This document shows positions 2,906-62,771 of a stretch of DNA of 64,000 bases, in pieces. The notes beneath the pieces are model-generated. The model was not told the origin of the DNA. It saw nothing but the letters and a program-made list of their open reading frames with translations, and made no database searches. How positions within the stretch are numbered: position 1 is the stretch's first letter; each line of letters begins with the position of its first letter. This DNA comes from Antechinus flavipes (lineage: Eukaryota), in NCBI RefSeq assembly GCF_016432865.1, contig NC_067399.1, forward strand, positions 511,624,001-511,688,000. The letters run 5' to 3'. Position numbers and translations under genes: made by a program.

Positions 2906-3837
2906 TAATATTTAACACAGTTAAATGATACCTGAATAATTCTTAAGATTGTTATCCCCAAGCAACGCTGCTCCTCTGCTTGGCCTCTGCAGCAACTCTG
3001 TGCAGTGGCTACTAGTGTCTGCTAACAAAGTCATCATCTGCTAGGTCTTTGCCAAAATATCATGGTCATCTGCTGGACTTAATATTGGCCACTAGAACTT
3101 CTTCCTGAAAGGGACTGTTATCACTCAGCAAACAGGGTAGAATCATGAGGATGACAATAATCAACACATTTTAGGTTTTTAAAAATTACACATACAGCCA
3201 TACTCAACAGTATACAAAAGGAATCTTCAAGTGACAATTAGGACATTTATTTCTACCTCCCTATTCAATGATGACCAGGATCCCTTATTAGAAAGATAAA
3301 AGTCATAAATAGGATATGATGATTGGGACTCCCAAGATTAATAACATTAAGTTTCTACTAAGTGCCAAATACAATGCTAAGCATTGAAAGATCAAGAAAG
3401 GCAAAAGATAGACTCTCTCTTCAAGGAGCTCACAATCTAAGGTATAAACCTGATGGTAGAGTACATGTTTCAACAAAGTTCAACCCTAAGTGGTCATACC
3501 TAGGATCTAGGAAGCCACAGCATTGGGAAAGGAGACCAACCTAGAAGGTTCAAGACATGGATATGGTGGTTTTAGTCCTAAAGTTACATAATACTGGAGA
3601 TGATTCTGTGAATCTCTTCTTATATATTATATACATAACCCACCTTACAGAAAATAAAGGGAGAAATGAAATTCAGAGTCTCTATATAAGTCTTTCCCTG
3701 TGCTTATAGAAATGGGTGGAATACAAAGGAAAGTTCCACATGAAGAATATGAAAAGCAATCAAAGGAAAGGAAATTATTTCTAAGCCTTTAACATACCCA
3801 CCTAATATCAAGTTTCTCACAATTAGCCACCTGCAGA

Positions 3838-3955
3838 ATTGATCAATCAAGTATTTATTAAGCTCTTACTAAGTACAAGGCACTCTACAAGTCATTGAAG
3901 ATACAAAAACAAAAATGAAAGAATCCCTGCAGCAAGGAATTTACATTCTATCAGA
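3838..3955 (-). mobile_element. LINE-2 3' tail
   Basis: aatcaatcaagtatttattaagctcttactaagtacaaggcact... is the reverse complement of the L2 3' terminus. Confidence 0.5.
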
Positions 3956-4102
3956 ATTAACGGGAAATATAAAACATGCAGCTATATGCATAGGGACTGG
4001 GGAATAGTAATGGGTGATAGACCTCTCAGAAAGAAGTAAAACTAGGGATAATTTTTTTCATGAAAGAGATCTTTAGATGGGAGTTTGGAAAGATGGATGT
4101 GT

Positions 4103-4530
4103 TTAGACATCCATATAAGAAATCCATTCTGACAAGATATACTAATCTTTTGGTACTGAATCTTCACCCAGTATTGACAGTTAGGGGGTAGGCTACTAAG
4201 CAGGACAAAAAAATCTGATATAGTGAATAGCTAGGATTTAACTGACAGAAATGAATGCAGAAATGTTTGCAGAGTTTAAGGATTTGATTACACATGTTTT
4301 CAATAGTGGAGTTTTTCTCATGGATGAAGGTGTTGACTAGTTCACATTGATTATCCCAAGTCATCCTTCTCTGTTTCTTCATCTAGTACAGTAACAATAT
4401 TCTTCTCCTTTGGGAGACCTAGGTTAGTCCACATATCACCTCCAGAAATCAATGGTATAGAAAAAGTTAGCTAGGTATAGGAGAAGGAGTTAAAAAAAAA
4501 AAAAAGTGTCCACATCACAGCATGAAACAT
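4103..4530 (-). pseudogene. RNase A-superfamily pseudogene (single coding exon, multiple stops and frameshifts)
   Basis: Acceptor cccaag|gaaagATG (ATG at 4530) followed by a hydrophobic signal-like stretch broken at a T14 run. Then FWR*YVD*PRSPKGEEYC, MKKQRRMTWDNQCELVNTFIHE..IENMCNQILKLCKH, a frameshift to FTISD..SSLPPNCQY..QKISISCQNG, and (H)MDV* ending at 4103. These match the RNase A HVD, CKxxNTF, PNCxY and IxIAC..PVH motifs. Confidence 0.88.
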
Positions 4531-4707
4531 CTTTCCTTGGGAAAGGAGAAGGAATAATAGCGAGAAAGAGCAGAAAGTGACAATCTGTAACTCCTTCTGA
4601 GACACCAATTTTTCATTCTATTATAACTCAAACCTTCAGTATATCTCCATCCCCACTGTGTCCCCCATCCCATTCTCTATCCATTTCTATAACTTCTCTT
4701 CATAGCT

Positions 4708-4741
4708 ACACACACAGACACACACACACACACACACACAC
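4708..4741. repeat. (CA)n microsatellite
   Basis: Read directly; one interruption (g). Confidence 0.95.
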
Positions 4742-5666
4742 TCACTCATAGAAAGAGAGAGAGTGATATACACACTCCTTTTATCAAATGTATTAGCTTT
4801 AAGCTTGATGTGAAAGTTTGGGGTTGGGAACAGAGCAAAATTGTTCAAGGAAATAAACAACTTTCTCCTGAACACAACCATAGGGACTTTTGCTCTACAC
4901 CACAGGGCCATCTTATAACCAAAACTGGGACAAAGGGTAGGCAATTTAAGCTGTTGCTTGGGTTGCATCTCTCGGGAGAGCACAAATAGGGACACTGTTT
5001 AATCCTACATTTTATTCATGCACATTTTAATATTCAGAAATGCTATTCTGTATGATACATAGGTATTAATTTTGTGATAAATCATGTGTGACTGTGAAGA
5101 TTCAATATTGGGCAATAGCATATAGGAGAAGATAGGGAGAGGGGCAACTATTAATCCTCATCTGGGGGTCTATAAAATGTCTTGTCCCAGCTTTGCTTAG
5201 ATTATTTAACTCTAGAGAGATATCGCTCTCTACTTCTAATTAGAGGCAAAGCCACCAATCTTCAGGACTAGAAATCCTCAGGTAGTAAGTAGTTGATGGT
5301 GATCTCTTTCAGCTCCCTATCAAAAAAAAAAAAAAAAATCAAAGTCTTTTCACTGCCTCATCGTGCTAATCTTTAACCTCTTATTTATACTACTAACATA
5401 CATCTCTCTGCTCACCCTAGTGGCCCAATTCTTCATCACTAACTTTCTACTTACTTTCAGGTGAATAATAAATACCCAGAGCCACGTCTGGAATATCACA
5501 CCTCAGGTATTACCTGTGCTCTGCCTCTTGTAGATTTAGAATTTAGAGCAAGAAAGATGCCAGGGTCTCTCTCATGTGGGTATATTCATGTTATACAGCC
5601 CTGAAGGATAGGTGGAACTAGACAGAAGTGGAGCCATGGTTTCATCTTAAGAGTGATATAACTTCA

Positions 5667-5835
5667 GGGAGCAGCTAGTGGCACAGTGGATAGAGCACCA
5701 GCCCTGAAAGCAGGAAGACCTGAGTTCAAATTTGCTCTCAGACACGTAATACTTCCTAGCTGTGTAACTCTGGGCAAGTCACTTAACCCCAGTTGCCTCA
5801 GTTAAAAAAAAAGAATTAATAAAAAAAATTTTTTT
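5667..5835 (+). mobile_element. tRNA-derived marsupial SINE (WSINE1/SINE1-like)
   Basis: gggagcagctag 5' end, A box tggcacagtgg, B box gagttcaaat, core ggcaagtcacttaacc, A-rich tail. The 18-bp TSD is 5649-5666, with its partner at 6306-6323. Confidence 0.9.
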
Positions 5836-5847
5836 AAAGAGTGCTAT

Positions 5848-6304
5848 TTGCTAAGTGAAATGAGCAGAATCAGGAGATCATTATATATCTCAACAACGAT
5901 ACTGTTTGAGGATGTATTCTGATGGAAGTGGATCTCTTCGATAAAGAGAGCTAATTCAGTTTCAATTGATCAAGGATGGACAGAAGCAGCTACACCCAAA
6001 GAAAGAACACTGGGAAATGAATATAAACTGCTTGCATTTTTGTTTTTCTTCCTGGGTACCTTCTGAATCCAATTCTCCCTGTACAACAAGAGAACTGTTC
6101 AGTTCTGCACACATATATTGTACCTAGGATATACTGTAATCTATTTAACATGTAAAGGACTACTTGCCATCTGGGAGAGGGGATGGAGGAAGGGAGGGGG
6201 AAAAATGGAACAGAAGTGAGTGCAAGGAATAATGCTGTAAAAAAAATTACCCTGGCATGGGTTCTGTCAATAAAAAGTTATTAAAAATTAAATAAAACAA
6301 AATA
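5848..6304 (+). mobile_element. 5'-truncated LINE-1 (ORF2 end plus 3'UTR)
   Basis: Begins tgctaagtgaaatgagcagaa (similar to 1779-1800) and ends AATAAA/A-tail. Perfect 12-bp TSD aaagagtgctat at 5836-5847 and 6305-6316. Confidence 0.92.
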
Positions 6305-6789
6305 AAAGAGTGCTATAACTTCAGATATAAGTTCATCACTCTCTAAGGCTACAACATGCTATGATTTTCAGACTTGAAGCCTAAATCCAAACCCATCTGT
6401 CCTATCCAATAGAGAAAAACAGAAAACAGAAAGAGATACAGAGAATGTCTTGCCTTTAAAAAAAAAAGAAAAGAAAAGAAAAAGAAAAAGAAAGTCTGAA
6501 AAAATGTTCCAGCCAACAATTTGATGAAAGGAGACCTACCCTAAGTCAATAATCCAACCCTTCATCCTTCAACTCTCTTTGAGGCTTCCTGATCTCAGAG
6601 TCCTCTGAATAATGCCCTGAACCTAAGGTTCACCAAGAACTAATAATGCAAAGGAAATGAGGGAAATAGGAGCCGTGTAAGAATAATCAGAGGAACTAGG
6701 TTTCTTGTATCTTTAAAGGTAGGAAAAGAGAGAAAAGCAGATTGAAAAACCCAAGAGAAGGGAAAGGACTGCTAATGCTGCCATGTAGT

Positions 6790-7505
6790 TTATTTTGATC
6801 TCTTTTCAAACTTTCACACTATTAATCATCTTCTTTTTCTTGAAAATCTCTATTTTCTAGATTTTCATGGTTCTATTCTTTCATGGTTTTATCCCTACCT
6901 ATCTGACTATTCATTCTCAGTCTCTTTTGCTGCATCTTTATTCAAGTCATCCCTCTGAACCCTGCATATGCCCCAAAGCTCTGTCCTTTTGTTATTTTAC
7001 TTGATGATCTCTTCAGTTCCCATGGATTCAGTTCCAAGATTATGAAAATAATCCTCAAATTTTTCTAGTCCTAACCTTATTTCTGTCATCCAGGGTTGTT
7101 TTTTTTTCCCTCCAACTGTCACTTGAACATCATGACAAGTCCAGTCAATTCTATCTTCCATAAGCATCCCTCATATATGTCCCTTCTCTCCTCTAAAACT
7201 GCTACTATCCTAGTTGTAGGTCCTAATCATTTCATGTCTGGACAATTGTAATAATCTGCTGATTGATCTTCTTGCCTCAATTGTCCTTTTATTCCAGTGC
7301 AAATTGTTGTTCCTAAGTTAAAGGTCTAACCATATTGCCCCCCAATTCAATAGGCTTGAGTAATTCTCTAATATTCCCAAGATCAAATATAAAATTCTCT
7401 AGCCTTCAAAGCACTTCATAATTTATTCCCTGTATAGTCTTCTTATACTTCACTTATCTCCTAGTATTCTGCAAGCCAAGGACTCTATCCTCCTAGCTTT
7501 TCTTC
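6790..7505 (+). mobile_element. LINE-2 fragment
   Basis: Degenerate L2 ORF2/3' motifs (tctgactattcattctcagtctc, tcccatggattcagtt, caagtccagtcaattctatctt). Confidence 0.65.
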
Positions 7506-8120
7506 ATACAAGACAGCTTGCCTTTTCAATCTCCACTTTCACTCTCCAGTCTCTTTCCGGATCTGCAAAAAAATCATAGATGAGGACCTATCATCCTCAT
7601 ACAAGGAAACAAAAGCACAGAAATTTTTTCCCCTGAGTAGTGCAAGACATTAGAGGATAAGCCCAAGTACAGATTGTAACATCCTTCCCTGAAGATATCT
7701 CAAGACAAAATGATCTCTCTAGAGTAGAGGGAGGCCCACCTTGCTCAGAGGAACAGGGATGAATGAGATAAATTTTTTTAGGGAGTCAAGAACCCTCTAT
7801 CCGATAGGATGGTCTCATTTTCCACTTTTCATAAGGATTCAGTTCTCTTCAAATGACAGAGTTCTGGAGCAACTAGAAGTTTTTCTGATGCAGCCAAGTC
7901 TGCCAATAAGCTGAGGAAAGAAAGAGGCATCCCCCTCCGGAATTACAGTGCATATCCTCAAGTTCAAAGGAATCTTAGAATTCATCCTACTCCAATATCT
8001 CCCAAAATATTAATTTTTCTCTAAAATATCCCTGACAAGTCTAATACCCAGGCTCCACTTTAATACCTCCAGTGAGAGGAAATTCATTATGTCTTGAGAC
8101 AGCTCATTCCATTTTCAAAT

Positions 8121-8372
8121 TAGTAGTGCAATGGACAGGGCACTAGGTCTGGAGTCAAGAAGACTCGAGTTCAAATTTAGCCTCAGACACTTACTAGCTA
8201 TGTAACACTGGACAAGTCACTTAATTTCCTTTAGCCTCAGTTTCCTCATCTGTAAAATAGGAATAATTAGCACATAGCAATAACAGAGTTGTTGTGAATA
8301 TCAAATGAAGTAATATTTGCAAAGTGCTTAACACAATATCTAGTATATAGTAGGTGCTTAATAAATGTTGCT
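8121..8372 (+). mobile_element. MIR (near full length)
   Basis: Head ctggagtcaagaagac..gagttcaaat, core gcctcagtttcctcatctgtaaaat, tail gtaggtgcttaataaatgtt. Confidence 0.9.
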
Positions 8373-9199
8373 TTTTATTATTGTATACTCCTTCCCAATA
8401 ACTTCCACCCACTAGTCCTAGCTCTTCTCTCAATAGACAGATTATCTCATCTTTCTTTCCCATAGTGCACTGGCTCTTTGACCCACAATACACTTTTCAG
8501 CTTAATCTGCCTTATAACATTTTTCCCATTACTTTCTTAAGTCTAGACAGCCGATAAAACAATGAATCAAGCCTTGATCTTTAGCATTTGCCAGGCTTGC
8601 ACATGTACTAAAGCCCCAGAAAGACCCCACACATTGCAAGGCCTCTCCTACCCACCTATAGCATGAGAAATATCATGTTATTGTTCAAAAGGAGCCAGAA
8701 GGAACATCTCTATCCCCTTTTCTATCCCCAAGAGATACTTTCATTCCTGACAGGAAAAGAAGCAAGAAGTTAGGGGTAGAAGCTAATCTGCTCTCTTCAG
8801 AGAGAAATTATCAAGCAAAAATGTTATCTATCTGATCCCTTTAGTATTGCCAATCTGGGGGGATATGATTGGATTACTGTGTCATTAATGGAAGAGGAGG
8901 AATAGAATTCCCAAATTCTACATCTAAGACTTAATTCCCTTTCTCATCAAGTACCATTTCCACAATAAACACATATAACAAAGAGCAATTATCAAAGAAA
9001 AGCCATTTATCCAAATTGGTAGTAAAAACAGAATCACAGAGATCCCATCTTTCTCCTGATATGAGAATCAATATTACATAATCAAAAGAGCACTAAACAT
9101 GTAATGAAACAACCAATCAACTAATCAGTTAAAAAATATTAAGTGCCTATTATGTACAAAGCATATCTCAGTGCTGAGGAGACATAGAAAATCATGACA

Positions 9200-9272
9200 T
9201 TACTGTGTGTTTATTATGGAATACTACTGTTCTATAGGAAATGATGAGCAGGATGCTCTCAGGGGAAAAAGC

Positions 9273-9304
<32 letters not shown>

Positions 9305-9830
9305 GCCTGAAAAGTCCTCCATAAACTCAAGCAAAGTGAAATGTACTGTATACAAAGTAATAACAATGTTCTGGGATGACAAGCTGATATTTTGTTATTC
9401 CCAGGAATACAATCATCCATGACTACTCTGAAAGATTTATGATGAAAAATCCTATCCATACATAGAGAAGGAACTGATTATAGCCAAATATAGATTTAAG
9501 CATTCTCTCTTACTCTTATCTCCTTTTTTTTTGTAACAATTTTTCTTGAGGGTTTTTATTTTCATTAGGGTGGGAGATCTATGTCTGTTTTTTCACAACT
9601 TTTTGTTATTTATTTATGGAAATGTTTTACATAACTTCACAAATGATTTCTTAATTGTGGATGGGAATAAGAGAAAGAACCTAGAACTCAAAAATTTTTA
9701 AAACAAATGTAAAAAAACTGTTTTGAATGTAACTGGGGAAAATATTAAATAAATTTTAAAAATATTTTTTGGAGAAAGATGTAGTAGGGAAAGAAAACAA
9801 ATGCTTCTTAATTGAAAAAATAATAAAATA
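9200..9830 (+). mobile_element. Old LINE-1 3' end
   Basis: tatggaatactactgttctataggaaatgatgagcaggatg matches the L1 ORF2 end; typical 3'UTR and A-rich tail follow. Confidence 0.75.
9272..9304. repeat. (CAA)11 microsatellite inside L1
   Basis: Eleven perfect CAA units counted directly. Confidence 0.95.
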
Positions 9831-10143
9831 AAATAATAGTTATTGGTACTTTTTTAAAAAAAAAAAAAGGTTAGGGCAGAATAGAATCAGAATCAGAGAC
9901 TTCCTTCTAAGACTTGCAGAATCTCCAAAGTTCTTCTAATTAAGACCTTACTTTTAAGCAGAGCTTAAAATGTCCTCTTCAAGAATTTCCTTACAAACTT
10001 GTTCCAATTTTTTGACTATTGAAAAATTGTTTATGTTTAATTACAATATTCAGTATTTTTTCTCATATTTTCAGTAAAGAATAGCTGCTATGAACATTAA
10101 ACACATTTGGTCAATCACTATTCAATGTAAAATAGCCTTTGAT

Positions 10144-10277
10144 NNNNNNNNNNNNNNNNNNNNNNNNNNNNNNNNNNNNNNNNNNNNNNNNNNNNNNNNN
10201 NNNNNNNNNNNNNNNNNNNNNNNNNNNNNNNNNNNNNNNNNNNNNNNNNNNNNNNNNNNNNNNNNNNNNNNNNNNNT
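10144..10277. other. Assembly gap (134 N)
   Basis: Run of N. Confidence 1.
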
Positions 10278-10699
10278 TCCCTCTTCTCTAAATATGGATC
10301 CTCAGAATATATCATATTGTCAAATATGGGTGCATAAATATGGAATTACTAGAACATGAATTAGTTCTATAGGTAAGATGTCATGAGGGTTTGACTGCCC
10401 CTTCCAGGGGAAATCAATCTCTGTGTGGATTTTTTTTCCATGCATCCCCTAAGACTTGGAGACATTTTTTTTATCATAATCATCAACAAATATTTATTGA
10501 GCATTTACTATGTACTATGTACTATGTACAGGGCTTAATGTTAAAGATACCCTGAATATGTCTTTGATCCATGACCAAAAAAGGAGGATATTTTTCTTAG
10601 AGCAATGAAGTAGATAATGTTTCAAGCTAGGAGCCAAGGGCACATGGATTTAGATCTAAAATAGAGATAATGCATCATTGTAGACAAGGTCTCTTCTCA

Positions 10700-10935
10700 C
10701 TTTGTCGCTCAGTTGTTTCAGTTGTGTTCAATTCTTCATGGCCCCATTTAAGTTTTTCTTGGCAAAGATACTAGAGTAGTTTACCATTTCCTTCTCCAGT
10801 TCATTTTATAGATGAGGAAACTGAAGCAAACTTGCCCAGGATCACACTGTTACTAAGAATCTAAGGCTAGATTTGAACTCAGGTCTTTTTAACTCTAGGC
10901 CCAGTATTCTATTCATTGTGCCATCTAACTACCCA
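10700..10935 (-). mobile_element. CORE-SINE (MAR1-like)
   Basis: ttttcttggcaaagatactagagtagtttaccatttccttctccag, cagatgaggaaactga-like core and gatttgaactcaggtc. Confidence 0.8.
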
Positions 10936-10959
10936 TTTTTTGTTTCTACCCTTACTTTC

Positions 10960-14169: not shown

Positions 14170-14400
14170 CTCTCCATTGGTTCAATCTGACACGTGTCCA
14201 TCCTCTTACTAGGGAAAACACTCTTATGTCACTGAATAATTTACATAGTGACCGCCTATTGGCGCTTAGAAATCATCTTCCTCTCCTGATTGGTTGATGA
14301 CATGTCCCCGCTTCTTGGGGATGAGCTTGCCTAGGAAGTGTTAGTGCTTCTGGAGGGTCACAGACGTTTCAATTTCCTTTTCCGGTTCGCCACAGAAGTT
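14170..14400 (+). promoter_or_regulatory. METTL17 core promoter (TATA-less, CCAAT/E-box/ETS)
   Basis: Inverted CCAAT (ATTGG) at 14176, 14258 and 14289; CACGTG at 14191; ETS-like aggaagtg at 14333 and tttccgg at 14379; local CpG enrichment just upstream of ATG 14401. Confidence 0.7.
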
Positions 14401-17400
14401 ATGGCGGCCACCAGAAGATTGAGATCCTTGCTGCTGGGAAGATGGAGCTGCCAGCCGGCAGGAATCCAGTTATCCCGGGTGAGAGCCATTATTCTCCCAG
14501 CGCGTTCTCCTGCTTCTGGAAACATCCCTGCTTGGTCACATCGGGAAAAGTTTTGAAGGGAAAGCTCACCGACCCCAGCCCTGTAAATCAGTGTATCTTT
14601 GGTCACGTGAAGAACTGTCATTCCACGAAACGATGAAGAGACAGTTCTATATAGTGATAGAGGGACAGAGACACAAAGAGCGATGCGCAGTAAAACGCTG
14701 GAGACAGGATGTGTGACAGAAAAGGAAAAGGGATAATGAGAGACAGGAAAGGGAGAAAAAATAAAAGGATTATGGGAGGCAGGTTGAAAATATGCAAATA
14801 ATGTGTAGGTTTAGAGGAAGTCAGAAATGGTGGGGGTGGAGGATTCCAGGGCTAGAATGGGATGAGTAATCTCAAAATCTGTGCCTATATGCAAATCGGA
14901 TGCTGGATTTATTTGCAAGGTTGTTATGGCCTCCTGACTAGTATCAGCATCTAAACTTACCTATAGTTTACGTAATATGAAACCAAGTAGCCTCCAAATC
15001 AGAATTCATCAATTCTGCTTATTAAAGCCACCCACGGCAGTTACTTGTTGCTATGTAGTAGTATTCTGAATTCTTGTTCAACCTTCCAACTCTTGAAAGT
15101 CTTTTAGTCCTTGCTGAGGCAAGAGAAACCTCCTATTCCTGGAGAAGACTCTTGTTCTCAAATAGTAGATTTAGAAGTAGAAGTGGTCTTATAGATACTA
15201 TCTAGTTCAAACCATTGGTTTTATAAATAAAGAAACCTCATGAGACTTAAAATTTACAGGTAACAAGTGACAAATGTGGGATTCAAACTCTGATTCTACT
15301 GATTGTAAATCTAGCACACCTTCTACCTGCACCATGCTGCCATCCCTGGTCTGTCTTCATCCACAACACTCTCTCTAAACTAGCAGTTTAGTAAATTACC
15401 TCTTAATTGAATTCAGTCTCAATCTGTGCCTTCCCACATTATTTGTTGTGAAGTGAAATAATATACATAAAACATTCTGCAAAATCTTAAAAGTAAAAAA
15501 ATTTAAAATGAACTATTATTACCCATATTTCTTCATGCACTAAATTACCTCATTCAGTTTTGCTCTTTCTGGAACTCAGCCACTTACTGACCTGATTCCC
15601 AGAGAGTCCCAGGAGAATGATATATTAGATTTCCTGGAGAAGCGACCACATCGTAAGCATCCAGGCATCTTAAATTTATCCCAAGTGCGGCTGCCACAGG
15701 CCCTGGTCACTGCAGCCCAACGCCTCGTACAGGGTGAGTAATTCCCTTGAACAAGGAAATGAGTAGAGAAAAGAAAGAAATCTTCATTTAATTGATTAAC
15801 CCCCTTTTCATCTCTGGCCCACAGAAAGCTCTATACCCAATATAGAGAAACAGGTTCAGACACTCACCAACTACCTCTGGAGTCGAAAACTTCCTATAGA
15901 ACCTGAGGAACTTCAAAAAAAAGCAATACAGCTGGAAAATGAACTCCAGCAAGCTACAGGTAAAAGCTAAGATGGGCCAAAGGAAGAAGTCAGGTTAGAA
16001 TAATTTAGGAAGAGAGAAAAGATTAGTTTTTAAATCAGTTTTGCAGACAAACATGTCAATTTTCCAATATGTCTTTGTTGAAATACTCATAAATATTACT
16101 TAACAACTAGAAGCTAGATATATCTATAAAGTAAAAATATGAGACCAAAAATAATAACACTTATATTATTTATCAAGAGTTTTCTCTGAAGACTAAATGA
16201 GTTTATAATATGTACAAAACACTTTGTGAATGGTAAACACAAAATGTCAGCTATTATTATAGACAATCTTTGATTCTATTGTGCATTTTATAAGGGTATA
16301 CCTAAATTTCCAGTCCATGCCTAGACCTTTCTCCTTTCCTCTAGAATCATCTGGTTCAGAAATGATCAGAAAATGTGTGGAACTTTCCCAGATTATACCA
16401 TGGAATGAAATCTCACCCACATATATTCCTCTTATCACACCCTTAACCTAACCTAGATTTGAACTAGCTTCCAGTAGTGCTTTCACGTACATATGACATT
16501 ATTGATTTCTCAGCATACTTTCCTTCAAGACAAATTTAGAAGAAAGTATCATGACTTCAGACTTGATTTATGACCTGTCATTGTTGAATGAGCAGTTATT
16601 TCTTTTTAATTAATTAATTTTGTTACCACTATCTCTTCCATTCTTCACACTCCATTATTGAATAGTTTTTTTTAAGTACTCATGATGACTCTGCAGAGCC
16701 CAACAAAACAAATTCCCACATTGGCTAAAGCTAAAAATTTATATCTCATTACACATTTTAAGTCCATCACCTCTGGCAAGCAGTAGGTGATAGATTTCAT
16801 CTTTCATCCTCTAGATTCATGGTTTATCATTTCATTGGAGTTCTAAAATCTAAAGGTATTTTTCTATACAGTGTTCTTGTCATATAAATTGTTCTAGTTT
16901 TCTAACTTCACTAAATCAGTTCATAAGCATCTTCCCATTTTCCTCTAAAACTGTTCATTTTGTCATAATTATGGCACAATAATATATCCATTATTCATAT
17001 ACTACAATTCGTTTATTGTTGTTCAATTGGGTCTGACTGAAATCTCATTTGAAATTTTTTTGGCAAAGATACTAGAGTAGCTTAATATTTCTTTCTCTGC
17101 TCATTTTACAGATGAGGAATTGAAGCAAACAGGGTTAAGTGCCATGCCTAGGGTCACACAATTCGTGTATGAGGCCACATTTGACCTCAGGAAGATGAAT
17201 CTGGCACTTTGTCCACTATACCCTCATAGCTACCCATTATTTGTTTAGCTATTCCCTAATAAGTGGTCGCTCCTTTAGTTTGTTTGAGATTATGAATAAT
17301 TATTTGTGACGGTACTTATAAATAACTTTGTGGAGTGCACTAGATTGCACAGACCCAGAATTAGGAAGAAGTGTTGCAGAAGAGTGAGGAAATTCCTTAT

Positions 17401-20400
17401 CAAAGCAGGTTCTTTTATCTTGAATTCCAGACCCCTAGTACTCATCACATTTACACATAAGCAAAACTGAATTAGTGATAGATACCATAAGAGGCAATGA
17501 GGGAAGATGAACTATCAGGGAAAGAATAATGCTCTGGTTAAACCATTATTCTTATGGCACAGAACATGTCTCATTTTTATGTAATATTTTTCTGTAGGTT
17601 TAGAAGCCTCCTGAGTTTTAAGTCCCTGCTGGGGAAAAAAAAAAGTGAGATAAAAATATTCCTAGTTTGCTGGGTTTCATTTTTCTGGCTCCTCAACTCT
17701 AGTCTTTGCTTTCTCTTCTCAGGATCATTACAGTCAGAGAAACAGCTTCGTGGAGCTGTGTTGAGTACCCTACGCAAAACTATCTACCATTGGCAAAAAC
17801 TAAGGTAAAGAAATTGCCCCAAAGCAGTACGGGGGAGAGAAGAGAAGAGGTTTGTCTTAAGACCAGAAAAAAAAAAGAAGCTTTACTCCAAGAAAAAAGA
17901 TAGGGGCATTAGGGACCAGGGAGATACCTTGATAAAATGAAAAAAAAAAAAAAAAAGTTAGGTATCATATTTCTTGCCTTCTCAGTGAATAAAACAGGGT
18001 TTGGAGGGAAGGAGAGAATTTGGACTGCAAAAAAATTTTTTAATTTTTTTTTAAATAAATGATGAAATGAATAAATTTAGAGGAAATTAAGACATGTTTT
18101 GATGCATAGCAAAATAAGCAGAATCAACGGAACAATTTATACAATAACAAAAATATAAAGAAAAAAGTTTTTAAAGATTTTAGATCTCTTATCAATGAAA
18201 ACAGTAAACAGTTAAAAAAAAAAAAATGATGAAAAACATCTCTTAAGATCCTGACAAAGAAGTGGGAATGTGGGAATTTGTTTTGCTGGACTATGGAACT
18301 TTATAGTGAGGGATGTATTATTTTTGTTTTATGGCATTTTGCTCAACTAGGGGTAATGGGACAGACTAATTTTGAAAGATAGTTAATTGAAAGAATAAAA
18401 AGAAGAATTTTTAAAAAGGACTATTCAGGACTTTGGGGGAAGAGAAGGAAGGGAAGGAATGAAAAATCTTAATATTCTTAGTAGCTATATCAAGTTAGTT
18501 AAATGTAAATTTTAAGTTACTCCTGTTTAATACTGTTTAGAACTGAAATTTATGCTCTAAAAATATTTCTATTTCATTCTATTATTGAAAAGACACACAC
18601 ATGTGAAGGATCTTTTTCTGTAGCCTATACCATTTTCTATCTTAACAAAAGTGTTTTTGGATTGTTGAGGCTCATTCCTTTACTCATGCAACAAAAAACT
18701 ATTAAAACTGTTGCTCTGTGCTAAGTACTGGTGGGAGGGAGGGAAGAGTTAGAGGGGATTCAAAATAAATTAAATACAATTACTAGAGTTATTTATAGGA
18801 ATTCTAAAATTTGTACAAAATAACTGCAGTAAAAAGTACGAATATACTGATAACAAGAAAAGTACAAATGTACTTTGAATTCAGACAAAGAAGAAATAAT
18901 TACAAGCTGGACAGATCAAAGAAAACTTGGTAGAACAGATAGCATTTGAATAGGCCTTGAATGGTCAGGATTTTAACACTGAATTCAACAATGGGAGGCT
19001 TTGAATGACAAGCTAAAGAGAATAATAAGAGTAATAACAGTACCAACTGACATTTATATTGCTTAAAGATTGCATATTGTTGTATACATTCTATCTCATT
19101 CATTCTTCACAAGACCCCTGTGAAATAGGTGCTATCATTGATAGCTAAGGAACCTGAGAGTGAAAAAGGTTAAGTGACTTGCCTAGAGCCACATAGCTAG
19201 TAAGTTTCTGAGGTAGAATTTGAATTGAGGTCTTCTTTATACCAAATCTAATACACTCTCCTCCTATACTTGGGTGCTTCCCATAGATATCAGTGGGTCA
19301 TTGTTGAAGGTTTGTGAACATAAAGTGCCATAATGTAAGCTCTGCTTTAGAAAATGAATCCAGAAGCACTGTCTAGGATGAACTAAAATAGAATAGAGGT
19401 TAAAAGATGTGTTTAGGAGCTTTGGCAGTAATCCAGGTGAGACATAGTAAAGTTATAACCCAGAGATAAAGGCTATAGGAATTGTAATCATGGAGGCAAG
19501 AGATACTGTGAGACTAGGACTCTATAAGATTTGACAAATATTTACATATACCTGGTTTCTTTTGCAGTTATGATGAAAGACTGAGCTTGCTATACATGGC
19601 AGCACGACTGGATGGTGGCTTTGCAGCTATTTCCAGAGCCTTCCATGAGGTAAAGCCCCTTAGTTTCTATTCCAAGACAGGTTCCTGAGATAGCCACAAA
19701 CTTTCAAAGACCTTCCATCTAACCTCTTTCCTAGGGCTACATTCTGAGTAATCTTTAGCAAGGCCCCCTCATTCCTGGCATCTGTTACTTTGTTTCTTCA
19801 GATCCAAGCTCGTGTTCCAGACTTTAAGCCACAAACTTTAATGGATTTTGGCTCAGGCACTGGTTCTGTTACTTGGTGAGTGGCTCAAGTTAGCATTAGC
19901 TCCACCATTTCCATCTTCAAGAAACCCAAGACCATTCCAAAGCCAAGAAACTAGTAGATTCCAGAGGAAAATGAAGTTAAAGTTTAGGCACTAATGTCAT
20001 CATTGATATTTTATTTATATATAGAAATTTATTTTAATTAATTTCTAGATAGGAGTTTAGGTGCATGAAAAGAAAACTTAGAAGCATGGGGAATGGGTCA
20101 GAGTTTGGAAAATAAGGACTACATTTAGAAAAGGAAAAAGGAGAGAAATGTAACATCAAGGGTAGGATGCTGCATATTAGTTTCTAGGGTACTGACATTT
20201 TTATGAGTCCATTTCCCTCCACAGCCCTCTATCCTTCATCCAGAAGGTGCTGAAAAATTAATAGAAATGATATCATTACTTTTTAACCTTTATCTGACAT
20301 AGCTTACTAGTATACTTAAGGGAATATGTATTAGCAGTACTCTGTTTAAGAACTCACTTTCTTAGATGTTTTAAATTGTCCTCCTATCTTCACAGGGCTG

Positions 20401-23400
20401 CTTATAATACTTGGGGCCATAGTCTTCGTGAATATTTGAATGTGGACAGCTCAGCTCCTATGTTGGCCTTAGCAGAAAGGCTTCTGAAAGGTAAGAATAA
20501 AGCAATATAAGATTGAAATGATCTACAAATAAAAAAGGCAAAGGACTAGGTAGAAGAGGTTGTGATAGAATGGAAAAGGAAAATTAGATTTCCTAGTCCC
20601 TTTAAAAAAAAAAAAAAAGATTCTTCCAAAAGATCAGATTTGTATTTTCATTAGATAAAAGCAAAGGGTAGTATCCTTTGCTAAGCTGAGAATGGGCTAG
20701 CTGGAGTCAAATAAGAGAAGGAATCCTTTTTTTCTTCCTGTTCTTCCCATGCCTTTCCTTCTCTAACCTATTTCATACTTTTTTTTTTCTCTTTTTTTCC
20801 TCTGTTCCTGGAATCTTTATTCTCTATTTGGATGTCCCTTCCCAATTCTGTCCCCCAGGTATATAGGCACATTTTAACTAATTCTCTTATTTATTCCCCA
20901 GGTGGTTTAGATTCTGGGAAACCTCATGTTCCAGGAGTCTTTTTTAGACAGTTTCTCCCAGTTTCACCAAAGGTAAGTGCCAGATTTCCTCAATGTACTG
21001 ATGGAAGAACAGGCAAATGGAAAATTTCAGCATCGAAATTCTATATAGAAAATATATATTTGGGGGCAGCTAGATGGCACAGTGGATAGAGTTCCTGCCC
21101 TGAAGTCAGGAGGACCTGAGTTCAAATCTAGTCTCAGACACTTAACACTTCCTAGCTGTGATCCTGGGCAAGTCACTTAATCCCAATTGCCTCAGCCAAA
21201 AAAAAGAAAGAAATAAAATATATATTTATATAGAAATTTTTATAGCATACCCTGAGTATTTGGCAATGGGTGGAAACAAAGCACAAGGGAAGTAGAAATT
21301 GGGGAGAGCCTCAGGGATGGAGAGAAGTCTGTCTAAAATGTCCCTTGCCTTGATTTCCAGATACAGTTTGATGTGGTAGTTTCTGCTTTCTCTCTAAGTG
21401 AGTTACCCAGCATGGCTGATCGAACTGAAGTCATTCAAACTTTGTGGCGTAAGACAGGCCACTTCCTGGTAAGCTGAGATCTTCCTTCACAAATCAAAAA
21501 TAAACTGCTTAAGTTCAACCTCTCTTGTATGAACTATTCCCCATACTTAAAACACCTTCAACAGGCACTACCATACCCACAAGCTTTTCCCTTATTTCTT
21601 TTCTTAGCCAAACTCCTTGAAAAAGCTGTCTATATTCATTGTCTTCATTTTTTTTTCCTTCCATTCTCTTCTAAACTCTCTGCAGCTGACTTCCAACCTC
21701 ATTGCTCAACTGAAATTACTCTTTCAAAAGTAATTAATAAACTTAATTGCCAAATCCTTTTCTTATTCTTCATCCTTCTCAACCTTCCTGCATCACTATT
21801 GATCACTCTCTCCTCTTGGATATTCTTCTTTCTGGATTTTCATTACGTTGTTTCATTTTGTTTCTCAAATTGCTTCGGTCTCCTTTGCTAGAACATCATC
21901 TATAAGAAATCCCTTAACTATTGGTATCCTTTAAAGCTCTATCTCTTATGCCCTTTTTTTTCTTTGACTATACTTTTTCTTTTAGTGAACTCATCTACTT
22001 TCATGGTTTTAATTATCAGCTTTAAATTGATGACTCCAATTCTATAATTCTACCCATATTCTCTTGGTTGAGAGCTAGTCTTTTATTAGATTACAACCAT
22101 TTATTAGTGCTAACTACATGCCAGACACTGTGATGAGCACTAAGAATACAAATACAGCCCCTGTCCTCAAGGAGCTTACATTTAATTAGGAAAAACAATA
22201 CATAAAAAAAGAGAAGCTGGAAAAAATTTGGAATCAGGGTGGCAGATCATTCACTGGAACAGGACATGGTAGAGAAATTATGGAGTACAGCCTGGAGAGG
22301 GATGAGACATAGCTGCCTTAGGCACCCTTCTTAAATGGAGGTTGTCTGAAGAGCTATCCAATAGAGAGCAGCCCCAGAGATAGAATGGCTCTTCTGCTGC
22401 AGAAGTTTGGTTCTGAGTCTGAGTGAGAACACTTGCACAGGATTTTCTTTTAAGTCAGAACTTTATTCTTGTCAAAGCAGTCATGGGTAACTAATTGGCA
22501 ATTAGGATTGGGGGAGGGGAGAAGGAAGAAAACTTTTGTACCAACATTTTGGCTCTAAGCCATGTTAGGAACATTATAGATAGATATAGATTATAGAGAT
22601 AGAAAAGAATATTTTTCAAACAGTAACTAACCATGGTCTGCTAAAGACAGTCAAAATAGCAACTTGGTTTCCTGGGTTCAAAAAACAGTTTATGGAGCAA
22701 ATGTTCCTTCTATAGGCCCTGCAAATCTAAACATACTTATGTTAGTAATTTTAGAAATGTTTATGTTAGTAATATTCATAAGCTATCGAGGGCCCAGAGT
22801 CAGGTGTAGTGTTCTTGGTTGGTTTTCTGGAGATCTCTAGACCAGCCTTCATTTCAGCTGAGTAATCACCACAAGAATAGCCAGGAATAAAATCCAAAAT
22901 TTTTATTGTCTCCTTGCCTGAGGCTCAGCTAGCTTTCTGGTGGCCCTTCAGCCTGGCCTTGGTCTCATTGGGGGAAGCAGGAGGACAGGCCAGCAACCTT
23001 GGTGGTGTGAGTTGGAGTGACTCTGTCTCTCCTTGGCTCCAAGAGCTTGAGCTCCCGCCTCCAGTCCTCTGTCTTCTCTGGCTCTGACCCTGGCTGAGTT
23101 TGTCCAGCTTATATGTTCTATTATAATTACATTGTCATAGGTGTGAATCTTGTAGAACTATATTAAGTACTAAGTACATGTACTGAACTAGAGAACTATT
23201 AATCACCATGCTAAACTAGATAACCATTGTCTTTTCAATTCCACTGACTTAACACCTTGTAAGAATCCTTGTTTCAGGTACAGAGTTCTGGCCCATAATA
23301 GTCAGCGTTCAACAAGTCCTCTATGCTTCCTATACATAAAATTCCAGGGTTATCCAGGACATTTATCACCAATACCTACAGGACATTTCAATCTGGATTC

Positions 23401-23708
23401 ACTATAGATCTCTCAAACCTAACGAGCCCATTATCTTCTCCCTTTACCCCAACCTGCCTCCCTTCAGAAAGTCCATTGTTTCTATCAAGAGTACCACCCT
23501 GCACCACAGAGAGACATCATGGCACAGTGGGAAAGTGCTGACTGCCATTTATTACCTCAGTAATCTCTTTGCCTGTAAGTGGAAGATTTGGAGGAGATGG
23601 CATCTAACATCTCTTCCATGTTTCTATAGTCTTTTGATCCTTTAAGTCACCCAGATTCACATCTTCTACATAATCCTCAACTCCTGTAACTCACCACCAC
23701 CCCAAACA

Positions 23709-23739
<31 letters not shown>

Positions 23740-26734
23740 CATCCAGTCACCTGCCAGATCTTGTTCAGTCTATATCTCACATCTGTTCTGTTTCCTCCAC
23801 TCACACAACCAACACCATTAATTGCCCCATGCCTGAAATGACCTCTCTCTCCTATTTAAGATTCTCTAGTTATTTCAGAGAGAAGTTCAAGTACCATTTT
23901 ACATGTGACATGCTACCTTTCCTGATTTCCCAGATTCTGGTGCCTTCCCAGTATCAATTCATGTGTCTTATTTATATATTTTGTATATAGTTATATGGCT
24001 ACCTGTTGGTTGTCCCTGCTAAACTGTAAACTACTTGGGAGCAAGGGTATTTTTCATTTTTGTCTTTGTATACCTACTGTCTAATACTTAATGAAGGCTT
24101 GTTGATTAATCCTCCCTTTTTCTCCTATTTCTTCTGCACAATTTTTTTTTAAGAAGCTAAGAATGTGCAAGAAATATTTGTTTATTTTTGATATATAAAT
24201 AATGAAAACAGTACATATATACATAGAAATAAACTATTATAATTAATCAGTAAATATGTGTCAGGTACCTACTGTGTGTTAGATCCTATATTACACATTG
24301 GAAATAAATCACAAAGATGATAAAGTCTCTGCCCTCAAGAAGTTTATATTCTTCTGGAGGTATATAACACATTTACAAATGAGTAAATAAAGAAATATTG
24401 GATCTCTATGTCTCTATCATCTATATTTATATCATCTTTGTCTTTATCTCTTTTTCTATCCATGTTGATTAACAAAAGAACATTACATAAAGGATGGGAA
24501 AAGCTCTGTGACATAGCAGTTTCTTAGTTTTAGCCTCCAGGAAACTTTTCCTGATAAAGATGGTCCGCTGTTTAATAAATATATTTATATTTGTATCTTT
24601 TGTATTTATCTTGACTAAATTTACCTCCCATCTCCCTTCTCCCAGAAAAACAACCTATATAACAAAGAATATTTTTAATTGCTTTTTACTTTCAAAATAC
24701 ATACAAAGATGGTTTTCAACATTCACCCTTGCAAAACCTTGTGTTACAAATTTTTCTCTTACCCTTATCTACTAGACAGCAAGATCCAACATGTGTTAAC
24801 TATGCGCAATTCTTCTATACATTTTTCCACATTTATCATCCTGCACAGTTTTTAATGCTTTAGTGGTCTTTGATGCTTTCTCTTTTGTGGTCTCCATTCT
24901 TCCCCTTACCTTTTAGAATAACTGGAATGGGGTGTTTAGGGCGGGATGGGGAGGGAGGGTGGGAAAGAAGGGGGTTTGTTTGCTTTATTTTTTGGATTAG
25001 GGGTTTGTTGTTGTTATTGAGGCAATTGGAAATGTGACTTGTCTAGGATCACACAGCTAGTAAATGTTAAGTAAGATTTGAATTCAGATCCTCCTTACTC
25101 CAGAGCCAGAATAATACCCACTTTGCCATCTAGCTGCCCCTAGAATGAGGTTTTTACCTTTGCCTCTTCCAGTAAAACTTATTTCATTGATACCTCTAGT
25201 GCTTTGGATCTTCTATTCATCTTCCATTTTTTTCCACAGGTTTTGATAGAGAATGGAACAAAAACTGGACACCGTCTCCTCATGGATGCAAGGGACCTAG
25301 TCCTTAAAGTGAGGTTCTTCTCTACTCTATCCTGCTTCTTCAGAACTGACATTCCCTTGAAAACTGAGAGTGCTCAACGATATGTTGAAGATGACTCCCA
25401 TTTGACAAAGCATATTGTCCTGGATCAGAATGATTATCCATCTGAGAAGCGAGTAAACAAAGGATTGTAGATTTCTGAAGCACAAAGGGTATAGGAGCTA
25501 GTATATTAAGGGGCACTTTAGTGACCCAAGTCACACTAGGCTGCAAAACATCAAGGTTTTAAAAGTTAGAATTTGCCAATAAGTGTATGAGAGTGACTTG
25601 ATCATACCATCCTGTACATTGAGTTATACTGTCTTCCCCAAGCTTCAGGTGTACCATGCCTGGTATTAGTTACCTAGATTGACATAGATTGACTATCTAA
25701 TGACTGATGAAGGATTGGTTAAGGACCTTTAAATGAGGAAATACAGTGACTGAACTGTGAGAGTGTCTTTCAACTACTGACACATATTTTTGGGCTTCAG
25801 GGACCAGAGAAATCTCCCTTAGACCATCGACCTGGACATGTCTTCGCTCCAGTAAGTATTCTTCCTTGATTGAACTGGTAGAATTAGTTTTGGGTTCAGC
25901 TATGGCTAGGAAAGGTTAAAGAAGGAAAATTAACCTATTATTTTATACTACCTTCCATCTGTTTACCTTATCTATATTTATAGTTCCACTGTATTTATAA
26001 TTCTCCAGTTCCTAACTCACTGTCTTCTAGTTTCTTTTACGTTTGTTATTCTTTTTTTCCACAGTGTCCCCATGAACTTCCTTGCCCCAAGCTATCTACT
26101 TCTCCAGCCCAGGCCTGCAGCTTTTCCCAAGCATACAGCACCATTCCTTTTAGCTGGGTAAGCATGCTGCTACAGAGTGGGATAACGGGATACATGAAAT
26201 AAGAATTAAGGTGAGGGACTAAATGATCTGGTCTGTGGAAGGAAAAAGGGTTTGGGGGGTCAGGCCTAAAAATAAGAGATCTTACTTATTTTTAACCTTT
26301 TCCCACCTTCTTTCCATATGGTTCACTATGGCCTCAGAACCATACTCATAAGGAGGAGAAGTTCTCTCTGGTAATCCTAAGCCGGAGCTTTCCAGGAGAG
26401 AATCATCGATTGGCCCGTGTCACCCAGCCTGTCCTTAAACGGCCACGCCATGTACATTGTCACTTGTGTTGCCCTGATGGCCATCTCCAACATGTTGTGG
26501 TTACTGCTCGACGACATGGCAGGTACATGGAACACGAGGAATTGGGGAAGAAAGGATATACTACTCACATGAATGTTGAAGGGGAAGGGGAAGCTATATC
26601 AGAGTGTCTCTCTTTTTCTTCTTCATAGACACTTATATCGCTGTGCTCGTGCTAGTAGCTGGGGCGATCGCTTGCCTTTGACCACTTCACTTGAGCTTCC
26701 TCCATCCCCTGTTCAAGATCCTTCTGACAACTGA
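14401..26734 (+). CDS. METTL17: Methyltransferase-like 17, mitochondrial small-subunit assembly factor (Rsm22 family), 460 aa
   Basis: Fourteen GT-AG exons in one frame: 14401-14478, 15580-15733, 15825-15959, 17723-17804, 19568-19649, 19802-19875, 20396-20490, 20902-20972, 21361-21468, 25240-25308, 25801-25851, 26065-26157, 26338-26522, 26629-26734 (1383 nt). Arg/Leu-rich presequence, [15 protein letters not shown] motif MDFGSGTGS, Fe-S Cys motifs CPHELPC..C and HCHLCCPDG. Confidence 0.97.
16590..17010 (-). mobile_element. LINE-1 3'UTR fragment (METTL17 intron 3)
   Basis: Antisense L1 3'UTR motifs (ttcactaaatcagttcataagc, ggcacaataatatatcc). Confidence 0.6.
17012..17235 (-). mobile_element. 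CORE-SINE (MAR1-like)
   Basis: ttttggcaaagatactagagtag, cattttacagatgaggaa, agggtcacaca. Confidence 0.75.
19045..19275 (-). mobile_element. MIR
   Basis: atctcattcattcttcacaagacccctgtg, aaggttaagtgacttgcctagagccacatagctagtaag, agaatttgaattgaggtcttc. Confidence 0.75.
21062..21214 (+). mobile_element. tRNA-derived marsupial SINE with 13-bp TSD (METTL17 intron 8)
   Basis: gggggcagctagatggcacagtgg A box, gagttcaaat B box, A tail; TSD aaaatatatattt at 21049-21061 and 21215-21227. Confidence 0.92.
22805..23300 (-). mobile_element. Solo ERV LTR, antisense to METTL17 (intron 9)
   Basis: tgtagt...cataata termini (TG..CA with one change); flanks gtcagg (22799-22804) and gtcagc (23301-23306); minus-strand CATATAAG near 23108-23115 and AATAAA at 22902-22907. 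Confidence 0.75.
23706..23741. repeat. (CA)n microsatellite
   Basis: Read directly. Confidence 0.95.
24600..24850 (-). mobile_element. LINE-1 3'UTR fragment
   Basis: caacattcacccttgcaaaaccttgtgtt..ttttccacatttatcat..ctgcaca is the reverse complement of the 3'UTR seen at 2040-2210. Confidence 0.7.
25005..25140 (-). mobile_element. tRNA-derived SINE
   Basis: Ends ccatctagctgcccc (reverse complement of the SINE 5' end); contains gatttgaattc (B box) and gtgacttgtctaggatcacacagctag. Confidence 0.8.
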
Positions 26735-48283: not shown

Positions 48284-48417
48284 NNNNNNNNNNNNNNNNN
48301 NNNNNNNNNNNNNNNNNNNNNNNNNNNNNNNNNNNNNNNNNNNNNNNNNNNNNNNNNNNNNNNNNNNNNNNNNNNNNNNNNNNNNNNNNNNNNNNNNNNN
48401 NNNNNNNNNNNNNNNNN
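48284..48417. other. Assembly gap (134 N)
   Basis: Run of N. Confidence 1.
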
Positions 48418-62306: not shown

Positions 62307-62771
62307 CTACTTCTCGAGGAGACCAACGATATATATGGGTTCCCCATTAAATTTTTTGTTGCAAAGTAGGTAGACCCGTTGAGTGGAAGTGGTTTCATTG
62401 TACTGGCAGGTGGTGGGCGGCTCCGAGATCACTCGTCGGGTACAGGTGGTAAGAAAAAAGGCATCTTGGCTGATAGTGCAGTACTCGCTGAAGTCCTCGC
62501 AGAAGCTGTCAGGGTTCTTGCAGTTTTTACTTATTTGGTTCCAAGGCGCATGCAGCACGTAGTGGATCCAGGGGCAGTGCTTATCATAACTGTATCCTCG
62601 AACAACGGACATCAGACCATTGCAGTAGCCGTGGAACCCCTTTGCAAATGTAATCTTGGGAAAGTCAACGTGCAGAATACGGAAATTTCTGACTTTGGAG
62701 GATGAGAAGGAGAGGAAGGTCAGAGCTGGTACCAGGAGTAGCTGGAGAACTAGAGTCCTGGCCAGAACCAT
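62307..62771 (-). CDS. RNASE13: Ribonuclease A family member 13 (secreted, probably non-catalytic), 154 aa
   Basis: Acceptor cctcag|gaaagATG (ATG at 62771). Signal peptide MVLARTLVLQLLLVPAL, then KGFHGYCNGLMS, CPWIHYVLHAPW, DSFCE...EYCT, PPTTCQYN, VYLLC; eight Cys. Matches the recalled human RNASE13 and its position next to TPPP2. The 174-aa ORF-track start lies in the intron. Confidence 0.93.
   Translation of the reverse strand: MVLARTLVLQLLLVPALTFLSFSSSKVRNFRILHVDFPKITFAKGFHGYCNGLMSVVRGYSYDKHCPWIHYVLHAPWNQISKNCKNPDSFCEDFSEYCTISQDAFFLTTCTRRVISEPPTTCQYNETTSTQRVYLLCNKKFNGEPIYIVGLLEK

What the first reader, a model, noticed from the sequence alone, without database searches (positions are those of the whole stretch)
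4103..4535. Easily missed RNase A-superfamily pseudogene whose ancestor was probably catalytically active
Seen: three frames stitch into a full RNase A layout, but the ORF track shows only a 72-aa piece. The His12 position reads TAT (4435-4433; CAT>TAT). The Lys41 position of CKxxNTF reads GAA (4343-4341; AAA>GAA). The C-terminal His119 region reads ..ctt AT atg gat gtc taa, consistent with CAT plus a small deletion. There are stops at 4438 (TGA, plausibly CGA decay) and 4426. Known: human RNASE2/3 lie on this side of METTL17 and marsupials have their own RNase expansion. Inference: this is a dead canonical host-defence or digestive RNase that may still be intact in related marsupials.
Basis: partly seen in the sequence, partly recalled or inferred. 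Interest (0 to 1): 0.72.

Follow-up and report, generated by a model that had tools for sequence, protein, structure and literature searches.

The report
Dead marsupial RNase24 gene upstream of METTL17
This is a real but ordinary dead copy of a known marsupial-only ribonuclease-like gene (RNase24), and two of its three catalytic residues were already gone before the gene broke.

Summary
The minus strand at 4103-4530 carries a complete single-exon RNase A-family gene. It is wrecked by four frameshifts, one in-frame deletion and three in-frame stops.

It is the positional orthologue of a gene whose reading frame is still open in three marsupials:
- koala (P0003)
- Gracilinanus (P0001)
- Monodelphis, where it is "Md-RNase24", one of the "opossum-specific" RNases of Cho & Zhang 2006 and Goo & Cho 2013

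Supporting numbers:
- tblastn sum E is 1e-25.
- The tree clade has 99/99 support.
- DNA is colinear with koala as far as METTL17.
- Spacing to RNASE13 (58 kb) and strand match the opossum.

The window comes from a dasyurid. A roughly 7%-diverged relative shows no listed difference at several of the lesions, so the gene probably died before those two species split.

Glu at the Lys41 position is shared with the intact koala gene, and both opossums have Val there. Tyr at the His119 position is also shared with koala. Only the His12-to-Tyr change is specific to the dead lineage.

The immediate ancestor was therefore most likely a secreted, RNase-fold protein that was already non-catalytic, not an active enzyme.

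This is a new, unannotated member of a known kind, and interest is low.

The parts
4103..4530 (-). Whole coding remnant of the RNase24-lineage pseudogene, from the ancestral ATG (4530-4528) to the terminal TAA (4105-4103)
   Evidence: DNA alignment to the koala coding exon, 78% identity. tblastn sum E 1e-25.
4492..4505 (-). T14 run inside the signal-peptide region. It adds 8 nt relative to koala and causes frameshift 1.
   Evidence: The contig of a related species runs on with more of the same letter, so the tract varies in length.
4436..4438 (-). In-frame stop TGA. Koala has CAA here and the opossum has CGA.
4433..4435 (-). TAT (Tyr) at the His12 position. Koala, Gracilinanus and Monodelphis all have His.
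   Evidence: Organism G reads TGT here.
4424..4426 (-). In-frame stop TAA where koala has TAC. It is specific to the window's lineage; organism G has TAC.
4415..4417 (-). Site of a 3-nt in-frame deletion relative to koala. The deletion is absent in organism G.
4383..4387 (-). 1-nt deletion (4386/4387, frameshift 2) followed by TAG where koala has TGG.
   Evidence: No difference is listed here for organism G.
4326..4346 (-). Signature motif remnant C-E-L-V-N-T-F. Glu (GAA 4343-4341) sits at the Lys41 position.
   Evidence: It aligns to CKPVNTF of RNase A. Koala has CELFNTF.
4167..4382 (-). The 72-aa open piece. It is the only part visible in an ORF list.
4231..4232 (-). Site of a 1-nt deletion (frameshift 3). 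It is absent in organism G.
4210..4212 (-). TTT (Phe) at the Cys84 position. This is the one lost cysteine of the eight conserved ones.
4115..4123 (-). 4-nt deletion (about 4121-4123, frameshift 4), followed by TCT and then TAT (4117-4115). The TAT is Tyr at the His119 position, shared with koala TAC.
14401..26628 (+). Context: METTL17 (Rsm22 domain) exons, head-to-head with the pseudogene and about 10 kb away.
   Evidence: The region is colinear with the koala Rsm22 gene.
62310..62771 (-). Context: intact RNASE13 ORF, 58 kb from the pseudogene on the same strand.

Best explanation
This is a unitary, orthologous pseudogene, dead in place, of the marsupial RNase24 lineage in a dasyurid genome.

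RNase24 is the RNase-cluster member nearest METTL17. It has one coding exon. It encodes a secreted protein of about 140 aa with the RNase A fold and eight cysteines.

In this lineage the catalytic Lys41 had already been replaced while the gene was an open frame: Val in didelphids, Glu in koala and here. In the Australian branch His119 had also become Tyr. The protein that was lost was therefore most likely not a working ribonuclease (inferred).

The frame then broke through stops, small deletions and expansion of a poly-T tract. This happened after the split from the koala lineage and probably before the split from a roughly 7%-diverged relative. The remnant has since drifted at the neutral rate of its surroundings.

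It has no function now.
For: Homology:
- Pfam PF00074 on the open piece.
- tblastn sum E 1e-25 over three frames.

Orthology:
- The tree clade of window, koala P0003 and Gracilinanus P0001 has 99/99 support.
- Window 3651-17869 is colinear with koala L001 17181-427, as far as the Rsm22/METTL17 gene.
- Opossum RNase24 lies 58 kb from RNase13ps on the same strand, as the pseudogene does from RNASE13 here. The Md-RNase24 protein is plainly the Gracilinanus orthologue.

Death:
- Relative to the koala frame there are four frameshifts, one 3-nt deletion and three stops.
- Substitutions are even across codon positions: 0.206, 0.206, 0.221.
- Coding identity (78%) is no higher than the flanks (83-84%).
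- The window's branch is about three times koala's, 0.62 against 0.19.
- Unique amino-acid changes are 20 in the window against 8 in koala, p=0.023.
- A contig of organism G shows no listed difference at TGA 4438, the 1-nt deletion at 4386/7, TAG 4385 or the 4-nt deletion. It lacks TAA 4426, the 3-nt deletion and the 1-nt deletion at 4232.

Triad:
- Glu41 and Tyr119 are shared with the open koala frame.
- Val41 with His119 occurs in both didelphids.
- Positions were fixed by the alignment to bovine RNase A.
Against: - No read-level check exists from the window's own species. Three of the four runs gave no orthologous contig, and the T-run length is unresolved.
- Five differences of organism G were not displayed, so 'shared lesion' rests on nothing being listed at those sites.
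- Koala-window dN/dS is 0.61 and all codon positions change alike. Constraint on the koala copy is therefore shown only weakly, by its open frame, eight cysteines and shorter branch.
- No enzyme assay exists for any RNase24. 'Non-catalytic' is inferred from what is known of K41 and H119 in RNase A.
- No RNA data were available.
Confidence: 0.9

Rival explanations
1. This is a dead canonical, catalytically active RNase, either host-defence RNase2/3-like or digestive RNase1-like. Its triad residues decayed only after the gene died.
For: - The N-T-F part of the signature and seven of eight cysteines are kept.
- The best PDB matches of the open piece are pancreatic RNases.
- The His12-to-Tyr change is specific to the dead lineage.
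- The position corresponds to the eutherian RNase14/RNase2-3 interval.
Against: - Glu at position 41 and Tyr at position 119 are shared with the open koala orthologue.
- Didelphid orthologues have Val41.
- The gene is on the same strand as RNASE13, whereas the eutherian RNase2/3 entries in Table S2 are on the opposite strand.
- Goo & Cho place RNase24 outside all 13 eutherian lineages.
Confidence: 0.05
2. The gene is intact in the animal, and the breaks are assembly or sequencing errors, for example in the T14 homopolymer.
For: - Homopolymer lengths are error-prone.
Against: - There are eight independent lesions, three of them substitutions that create stops.
- An independent contig from another species shows no listed difference at several of them.
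- The substitution pattern is neutral.
Confidence: 0.01
3. The remnant still does something, for example as a short peptide from the 72-aa ORF or as a non-coding transcript.
For: - A 72-aa ATG-started ORF survives.
- No RNA data exclude transcription.
Against: - The ORF lacks the signal peptide and the first and last catalytic positions.
- The sequence is no better conserved than its flanks.
- The word search found no protein relative of the 72-aa piece. In the full search only the full-length Gracilinanus RNase was a relative.
Confidence: 0.03

Closest known systems
Md-RNase24 of Monodelphis domestica, an 'opossum-specific' RNase (Cho & Zhang 2006; Goo & Cho 2013, PMC3845642), and its annotated orthologues 'ribonuclease-like' in Gracilinanus agilis (P0001) and Phascolarctos cinereus (P0003)
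   Same: - Same locus: nearest RNase to METTL17, 58 kb from RNASE13 and on the same strand.
- Same single-exon layout and signal-peptide start.
- Cys40-x-x-x-N-T-F without Lys.
- 61% amino-acid identity to koala over the unbroken codons.
- A tree clade with 99/99 support.
   Different: - Here the frame is broken eight times.
- His12 is Tyr and Cys84 is Phe.
- The three named orthologues keep open frames with all eight cysteines.
RNase pseudogenes catalogued across mammals (Goo & Cho 2013), for example RNase14ps, RNase15ps and RNase2/3ps in eutherians, and RNase13ps and RNase27ps in the opossum
   Same: It is a lineage-specific death, in place, of one member of the chr14q11-type RNase cluster. 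It meets their definition of a pseudogene: stops or frameshifts in the single coding exon.
   Different: It is a different gene lineage and a different host clade (a dasyurid). It is not in their catalogue, which covers only Monodelphis among marsupials.
Non-canonical RNase A members RNase9-13 (the 'inactive ribonuclease-like proteins')
   Same: The parent lineage keeps the fold and the cysteines but has lost triad residues, as RNase13 in this same window has.
   Different: - RNase24 keeps His12 and the N-T-F part of the signature.
- It groups with the marsupial-specific expansion rather than with RNase9-13. tblastn identity to the window's RNASE13 is only about 27%.

Membership tests
RNase A superfamily (Pfam PF00074) | Significant match to the family profile | tested here: met
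   The 72-aa piece scores 23.1 bits, equal to the cut-off. Orthologues P0001 and P0003 score 92 and 86 bits. tblastn over three frames gives 1e-25.
RNase A superfamily (Pfam PF00074) | Six to eight conserved cysteines in the family's spacing | tested here: met
   Seven of the eight positions are kept. Cys84 is Phe (4212-4210).
RNase A superfamily (Pfam PF00074) | Single coding exon with an N-terminal signal peptide | tested here: met
   ATG 4530-4528 is followed by a hydrophobic stretch that aligns to the koala and Gracilinanus signal peptides. The whole CDS is colinear with no intron.
Canonical (catalytically active) RNases 1-8 | Catalytic triad His12, Lys41, His119 | tested here: not met
   The window has Tyr, Glu, Tyr. 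Intact koala has His, Glu, Tyr. Didelphids have His, Val, His.
Canonical (catalytically active) RNases 1-8 | CKxxNTF signature | tested here: not met
   The motif reads C-E-L-V-N-T-F. The Lys is missing here and in all three open orthologues.
Marsupial RNase24 lineage | Orthology by phylogeny | tested here: met
   The clade with P0001 and P0003 has 99/99 support. No eutherian RNases were in the tree.
Marsupial RNase24 lineage | Orthology by position | tested here: met
   The region is colinear with koala up to METTL17. Spacing and strand relative to RNase13 match opossum Table S2.
Pseudogene (definition of Goo & Cho 2013) | ORF interrupted by premature stops or frameshifting indels | tested here: met
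   Three stops and four frameshifts relative to the koala frame.
Pseudogene (definition of Goo & Cho 2013) | Lesions real in the organism, not assembly errors | tested here: inconclusive
   Same-species contigs were not recovered. A related species' contig shows no listed difference at several lesions.

The most novel reading that the evidence does not exclude
RNase24 may not be 'opossum-specific'. It could be an ancient, marsupial-wide RNase-fold protein that gave up Lys41 before American and Australian marsupials split. It would then have been kept as an open frame for tens of millions of years for a function that needs no RNA cleavage, and become dispensable in dasyurids. That would make it a natural loss-of-function case for a non-catalytic RNase.
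Probability: 0.45. Interest if true: 0.35.

Novelty: new member of a known kind. Interest (0 to 1): 0.2.

Why it matters
It matters little on its own. RNase A genes are born and die constantly, and this lineage was described in the opossum in 2006.

Two modest points come out of it:
- The so-called opossum-specific RNase24 also exists as an open frame in koala and as a wreck in a dasyurid, so it dates to the marsupial ancestor.
- Comparing the wreck with open orthologues shows that apparent decay of catalytic residues in a pseudogene can predate its death. Reading ancestral activity from a pseudogene alone is unsafe.

Tried and rejected
- Word search with the 72-aa piece found nothing. The costly full search was therefore used, and it returned the Gracilinanus orthologue plus one spurious Cys-rich repeat protein, P0002.
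- Pfam on the N- and C-terminal pieces alone gave nothing. Their homology shows only against the marsupial orthologues.
No didelphid-koala dN/dS could be computed.
- Read laying returned no orthologous contig for runs X2, X7 and X8. The T14 run and the stops could not be checked in the window's own species.
- Placing the lineage relative to eutherian RNase1, 2/3 and 14 was not possible. The word searches returned only marsupial, turtle and angiogenin sequences.
- A repeat origin is rejected. The segment and both flanks align one-to-one with the koala locus.
- An RNase2/3 assignment is rejected on strand and on Goo & Cho's placement of RNase24 outside the eutherian lineages.
- The broken frame was read through only with X at every break.

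Full report
**What is there**

Only a 72-aa ORF (4164-4382) is open on the minus strand between 4103 and 4530. That piece reaches the Pfam RnaseA gathering score exactly (23.1 bits, E 1.1e-4, profile positions 28-69). It aligns to residues 29-73 of bovine RNase A. Its C-E-L-V-N-T-F lies over CKPVNTF. No other canonical RNase motif occurs in the 64 kb. The only other family member is an intact RNASE13 ORF at 62310-62771 on the minus strand.

**Finding relatives**

The word search with the 72-aa piece was blank, so I used the full representative search. It gave one true hit, P0001 (141 aa, 47% identity, E 1.5e-7), and one spurious Cys-rich repeat protein.
- P0001 is annotated "ribonuclease-like [Gracilinanus agilis]".
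- A search with P0001 added P0003, "ribonuclease-like [Phascolarctos cinereus]".
- A profile of the two added paralogues from Trichosurus, Vombatus, Sarcophilus and koala, plus turtle RNases and a wallaby angiogenin.

**The three-frame layout is real**

tblastn of P0003 and P0001 against the window gives three colinear segments in three minus-strand frames: 4459-4364, 4382-4206 and 4227-4105. Sum E is 1e-25 and 4e-19. The best E on the reversed window is 0.5.

The window's 4050-4600 aligns base for base with the koala coding exon and both flanks. Projected on the koala frame, the window shows these breaks:
- +8 nt in a T14 run (4492-4505)
- TGA at 4438-4436
- TAA at 4426-4424
- a 3-nt in-frame deletion at about 4416
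- a 1-nt deletion at 4386/4387
- TAG at 4385-4383
- a 1-nt deletion at 4231/4232
- a 4-nt deletion at about 4121-4123

The ancestral ATG (4530-4528) and the terminal stop (4105-4103) are still in place.

**Orthology**

- In a maximum-likelihood tree the X-bridged window sequence groups with koala P0003 and Gracilinanus P0001 (99/99). This clade sits inside a marsupial-only clade (99/98).
- The koala gene lies head-to-head with an Rsm22-domain gene, which is METTL17.
- Window 3651-17869 is colinear with koala L001 17181-427 at 73-88% identity. The window's Rsm22 exons and first METTL17 codons are at 14401 onward.
- In Goo & Cho 2013 (PMC3845642, suppl. Table S2) opossum RNase24 lies 58 kb from RNase13ps on the same strand. 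This matches the pseudogene's relation to RNASE13 here.
- Their Md-RNase24 protein is plainly the Gracilinanus orthologue.

The element is therefore the in-place remnant of the RNase24 lineage. Cho & Zhang (2006) listed that lineage among the "opossum-specific" RNases.

**Which animal**

The window's RNASE13 falls in one 90% cluster with Sarcophilus harrisii and Sminthopsis crassicaudata RNASE13. The genome is therefore a dasyurid.

**It is dead, and has probably been for some time**

- Koala-window substitutions are even over codon positions: 0.206, 0.206, 0.221.
- Coding identity (78%) is not above the flanks (83-84%).
- dN/dS is 0.61.
- With Gracilinanus as outgroup the window has 20 unique amino-acid changes against koala's 8 (p=0.023). 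Its tree branch is three times longer.

Only one of four public runs yielded an orthologous contig. That was organism G, about 7% diverged, covering 3950-4505.
- It differs from the window at three lesions. It has TAC in place of TAA 4426. It has three extra letters at the 3-nt deletion. It has one extra letter at the 4232 deletion.
- It shows no listed difference at TGA 4438, the 4386/7 deletion, TAG 4385 or the 4-nt deletion.
- Its poly-T tract runs on further than the window's.
- At the His12 position it reads TGT.

Part of the damage therefore predates the split of the two species, and the rest accumulated later. Two caveats apply. Five differences were not displayed, and the window's own species was not recovered, so the T14 length is unverified.

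**The catalytic residues**

The alignment to RNase A fixes the positions.

| Position | Window | Koala (open frame) | Didelphids (Gracilinanus, Monodelphis) |
|---|---|---|---|
| His12 | TAT (Tyr) | His | His |
| Lys41 | GAA (Glu) | Glu (CELFNTF) | Val |
| His119 | TAT, 4117-4115 (Tyr) | TAC (Tyr) | His |

- His12: this loss belongs to the dead lineage.
- Lys41: by parsimony Lys was gone before the didelphid-Australidelphian split (inference).
- His119: Tyr arose in the Australian branch while the frame was open.

Paralogues in the marsupial clade also carry Arg, Val or Ile at position 41 and Tyr at position 119.

From established RNase A enzymology (my knowledge, not tested here), replacing Lys41 or His119 lowers activity by orders of magnitude. 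The protein lost in dasyurids was therefore most likely already a non-catalytic RNase-fold protein.

The opossum codon is CGA and koala has CAA.

**Comparison with the known**

- RNase cluster pseudogenes are common. Goo & Cho count dozens, including two in the opossum.
- RNase24 itself has been described since 2006.
- What is new is only that this lineage extends to Australian marsupials, is open in koala and is dead in a dasyurid.
- The position and strand do not fit RNase2/3.
- Its relation to eutherian lineages such as RNase14 could not be tested. No eutherian sequences were retrievable by reference.

**Verdict**

It is a pseudogene, but not of an active canonical enzyme. It is an ordinary new member of a known kind, and interest is low.

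Noticed in passing
window 62310-62771 (-): An intact 154-aa RNASE13 ORF (PF00074, 86.7 bits). It sits in a 90% cluster with the Sarcophilus and Sminthopsis 'inactive ribonuclease-like protein 13', which identifies the genome as a dasyurid.
   Followed up: partly
L001 10001-10135 and 16304-16321 (koala): The annotated koala model P0003 (169 aa) splices in an exon 6 kb upstream. In the native exon the first ATG of the other species reads ACG, but an in-frame second ATG (16319) gives a 137-aa protein with a short signal peptide. The 169-aa N-terminus is probably a model artefact.
   Followed up: partly
window 4289-4342: All four public runs hold a second contig matching just this 54-nt stretch, the N-T-F-I-H-E-K-N region, with 9-10 mismatches. 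These are presumably paralogous marsupial RNase genes sharing the most conserved block.
   Followed up: no
alignment A3 (P0004, P0005, P0006, P0010): Open marsupial paralogues from Trichosurus, Vombatus, Sarcophilus and koala also lack canonical residues. Position 41 is Arg, Val or Ile in three of the four, and position 119 is Tyr in three. Loss of the triad is widespread in the marsupial-specific RNase expansion.
   Followed up: partly
L002 (koala, about 190 kb from P0003 on the same chromosome): Koala paralogue P0010 ('ribonuclease pancreatic-like') lies in the same chromosomal neighbourhood. It has a very long tree branch (3.17).
   Followed up: no
Trichosurus locus of P0004 (no DNA served): The Trichosurus paralogue lies inside the span of a gene whose product carries a Tim17 domain. 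This may be a mis-joined gene model or a relocated copy.
   Followed up: no
window 4690-4745 and 1300-1731: There is a (GT)n microsatellite just upstream of the pseudogene. A 143-aa ORF at 1300-1731 looks like a LINE-1 ORF2 fragment by eye, but Pfam gave no hit.
   Followed up: no
window 29267-29908 (+) and 45000-47000: The first is a ZIP zinc-transporter exon (PF02535, 168 bits), by position SLC39A2. The second is a GC-rich island (62-67% GC), probably the NDRG2 promoter region. Gene names are from synteny and memory; only the Pfam domain was tested.
   Followed up: partly
window 10144-10276 and 48284-48417: Two runs of N (133 and 134 letters).
   Followed up: no
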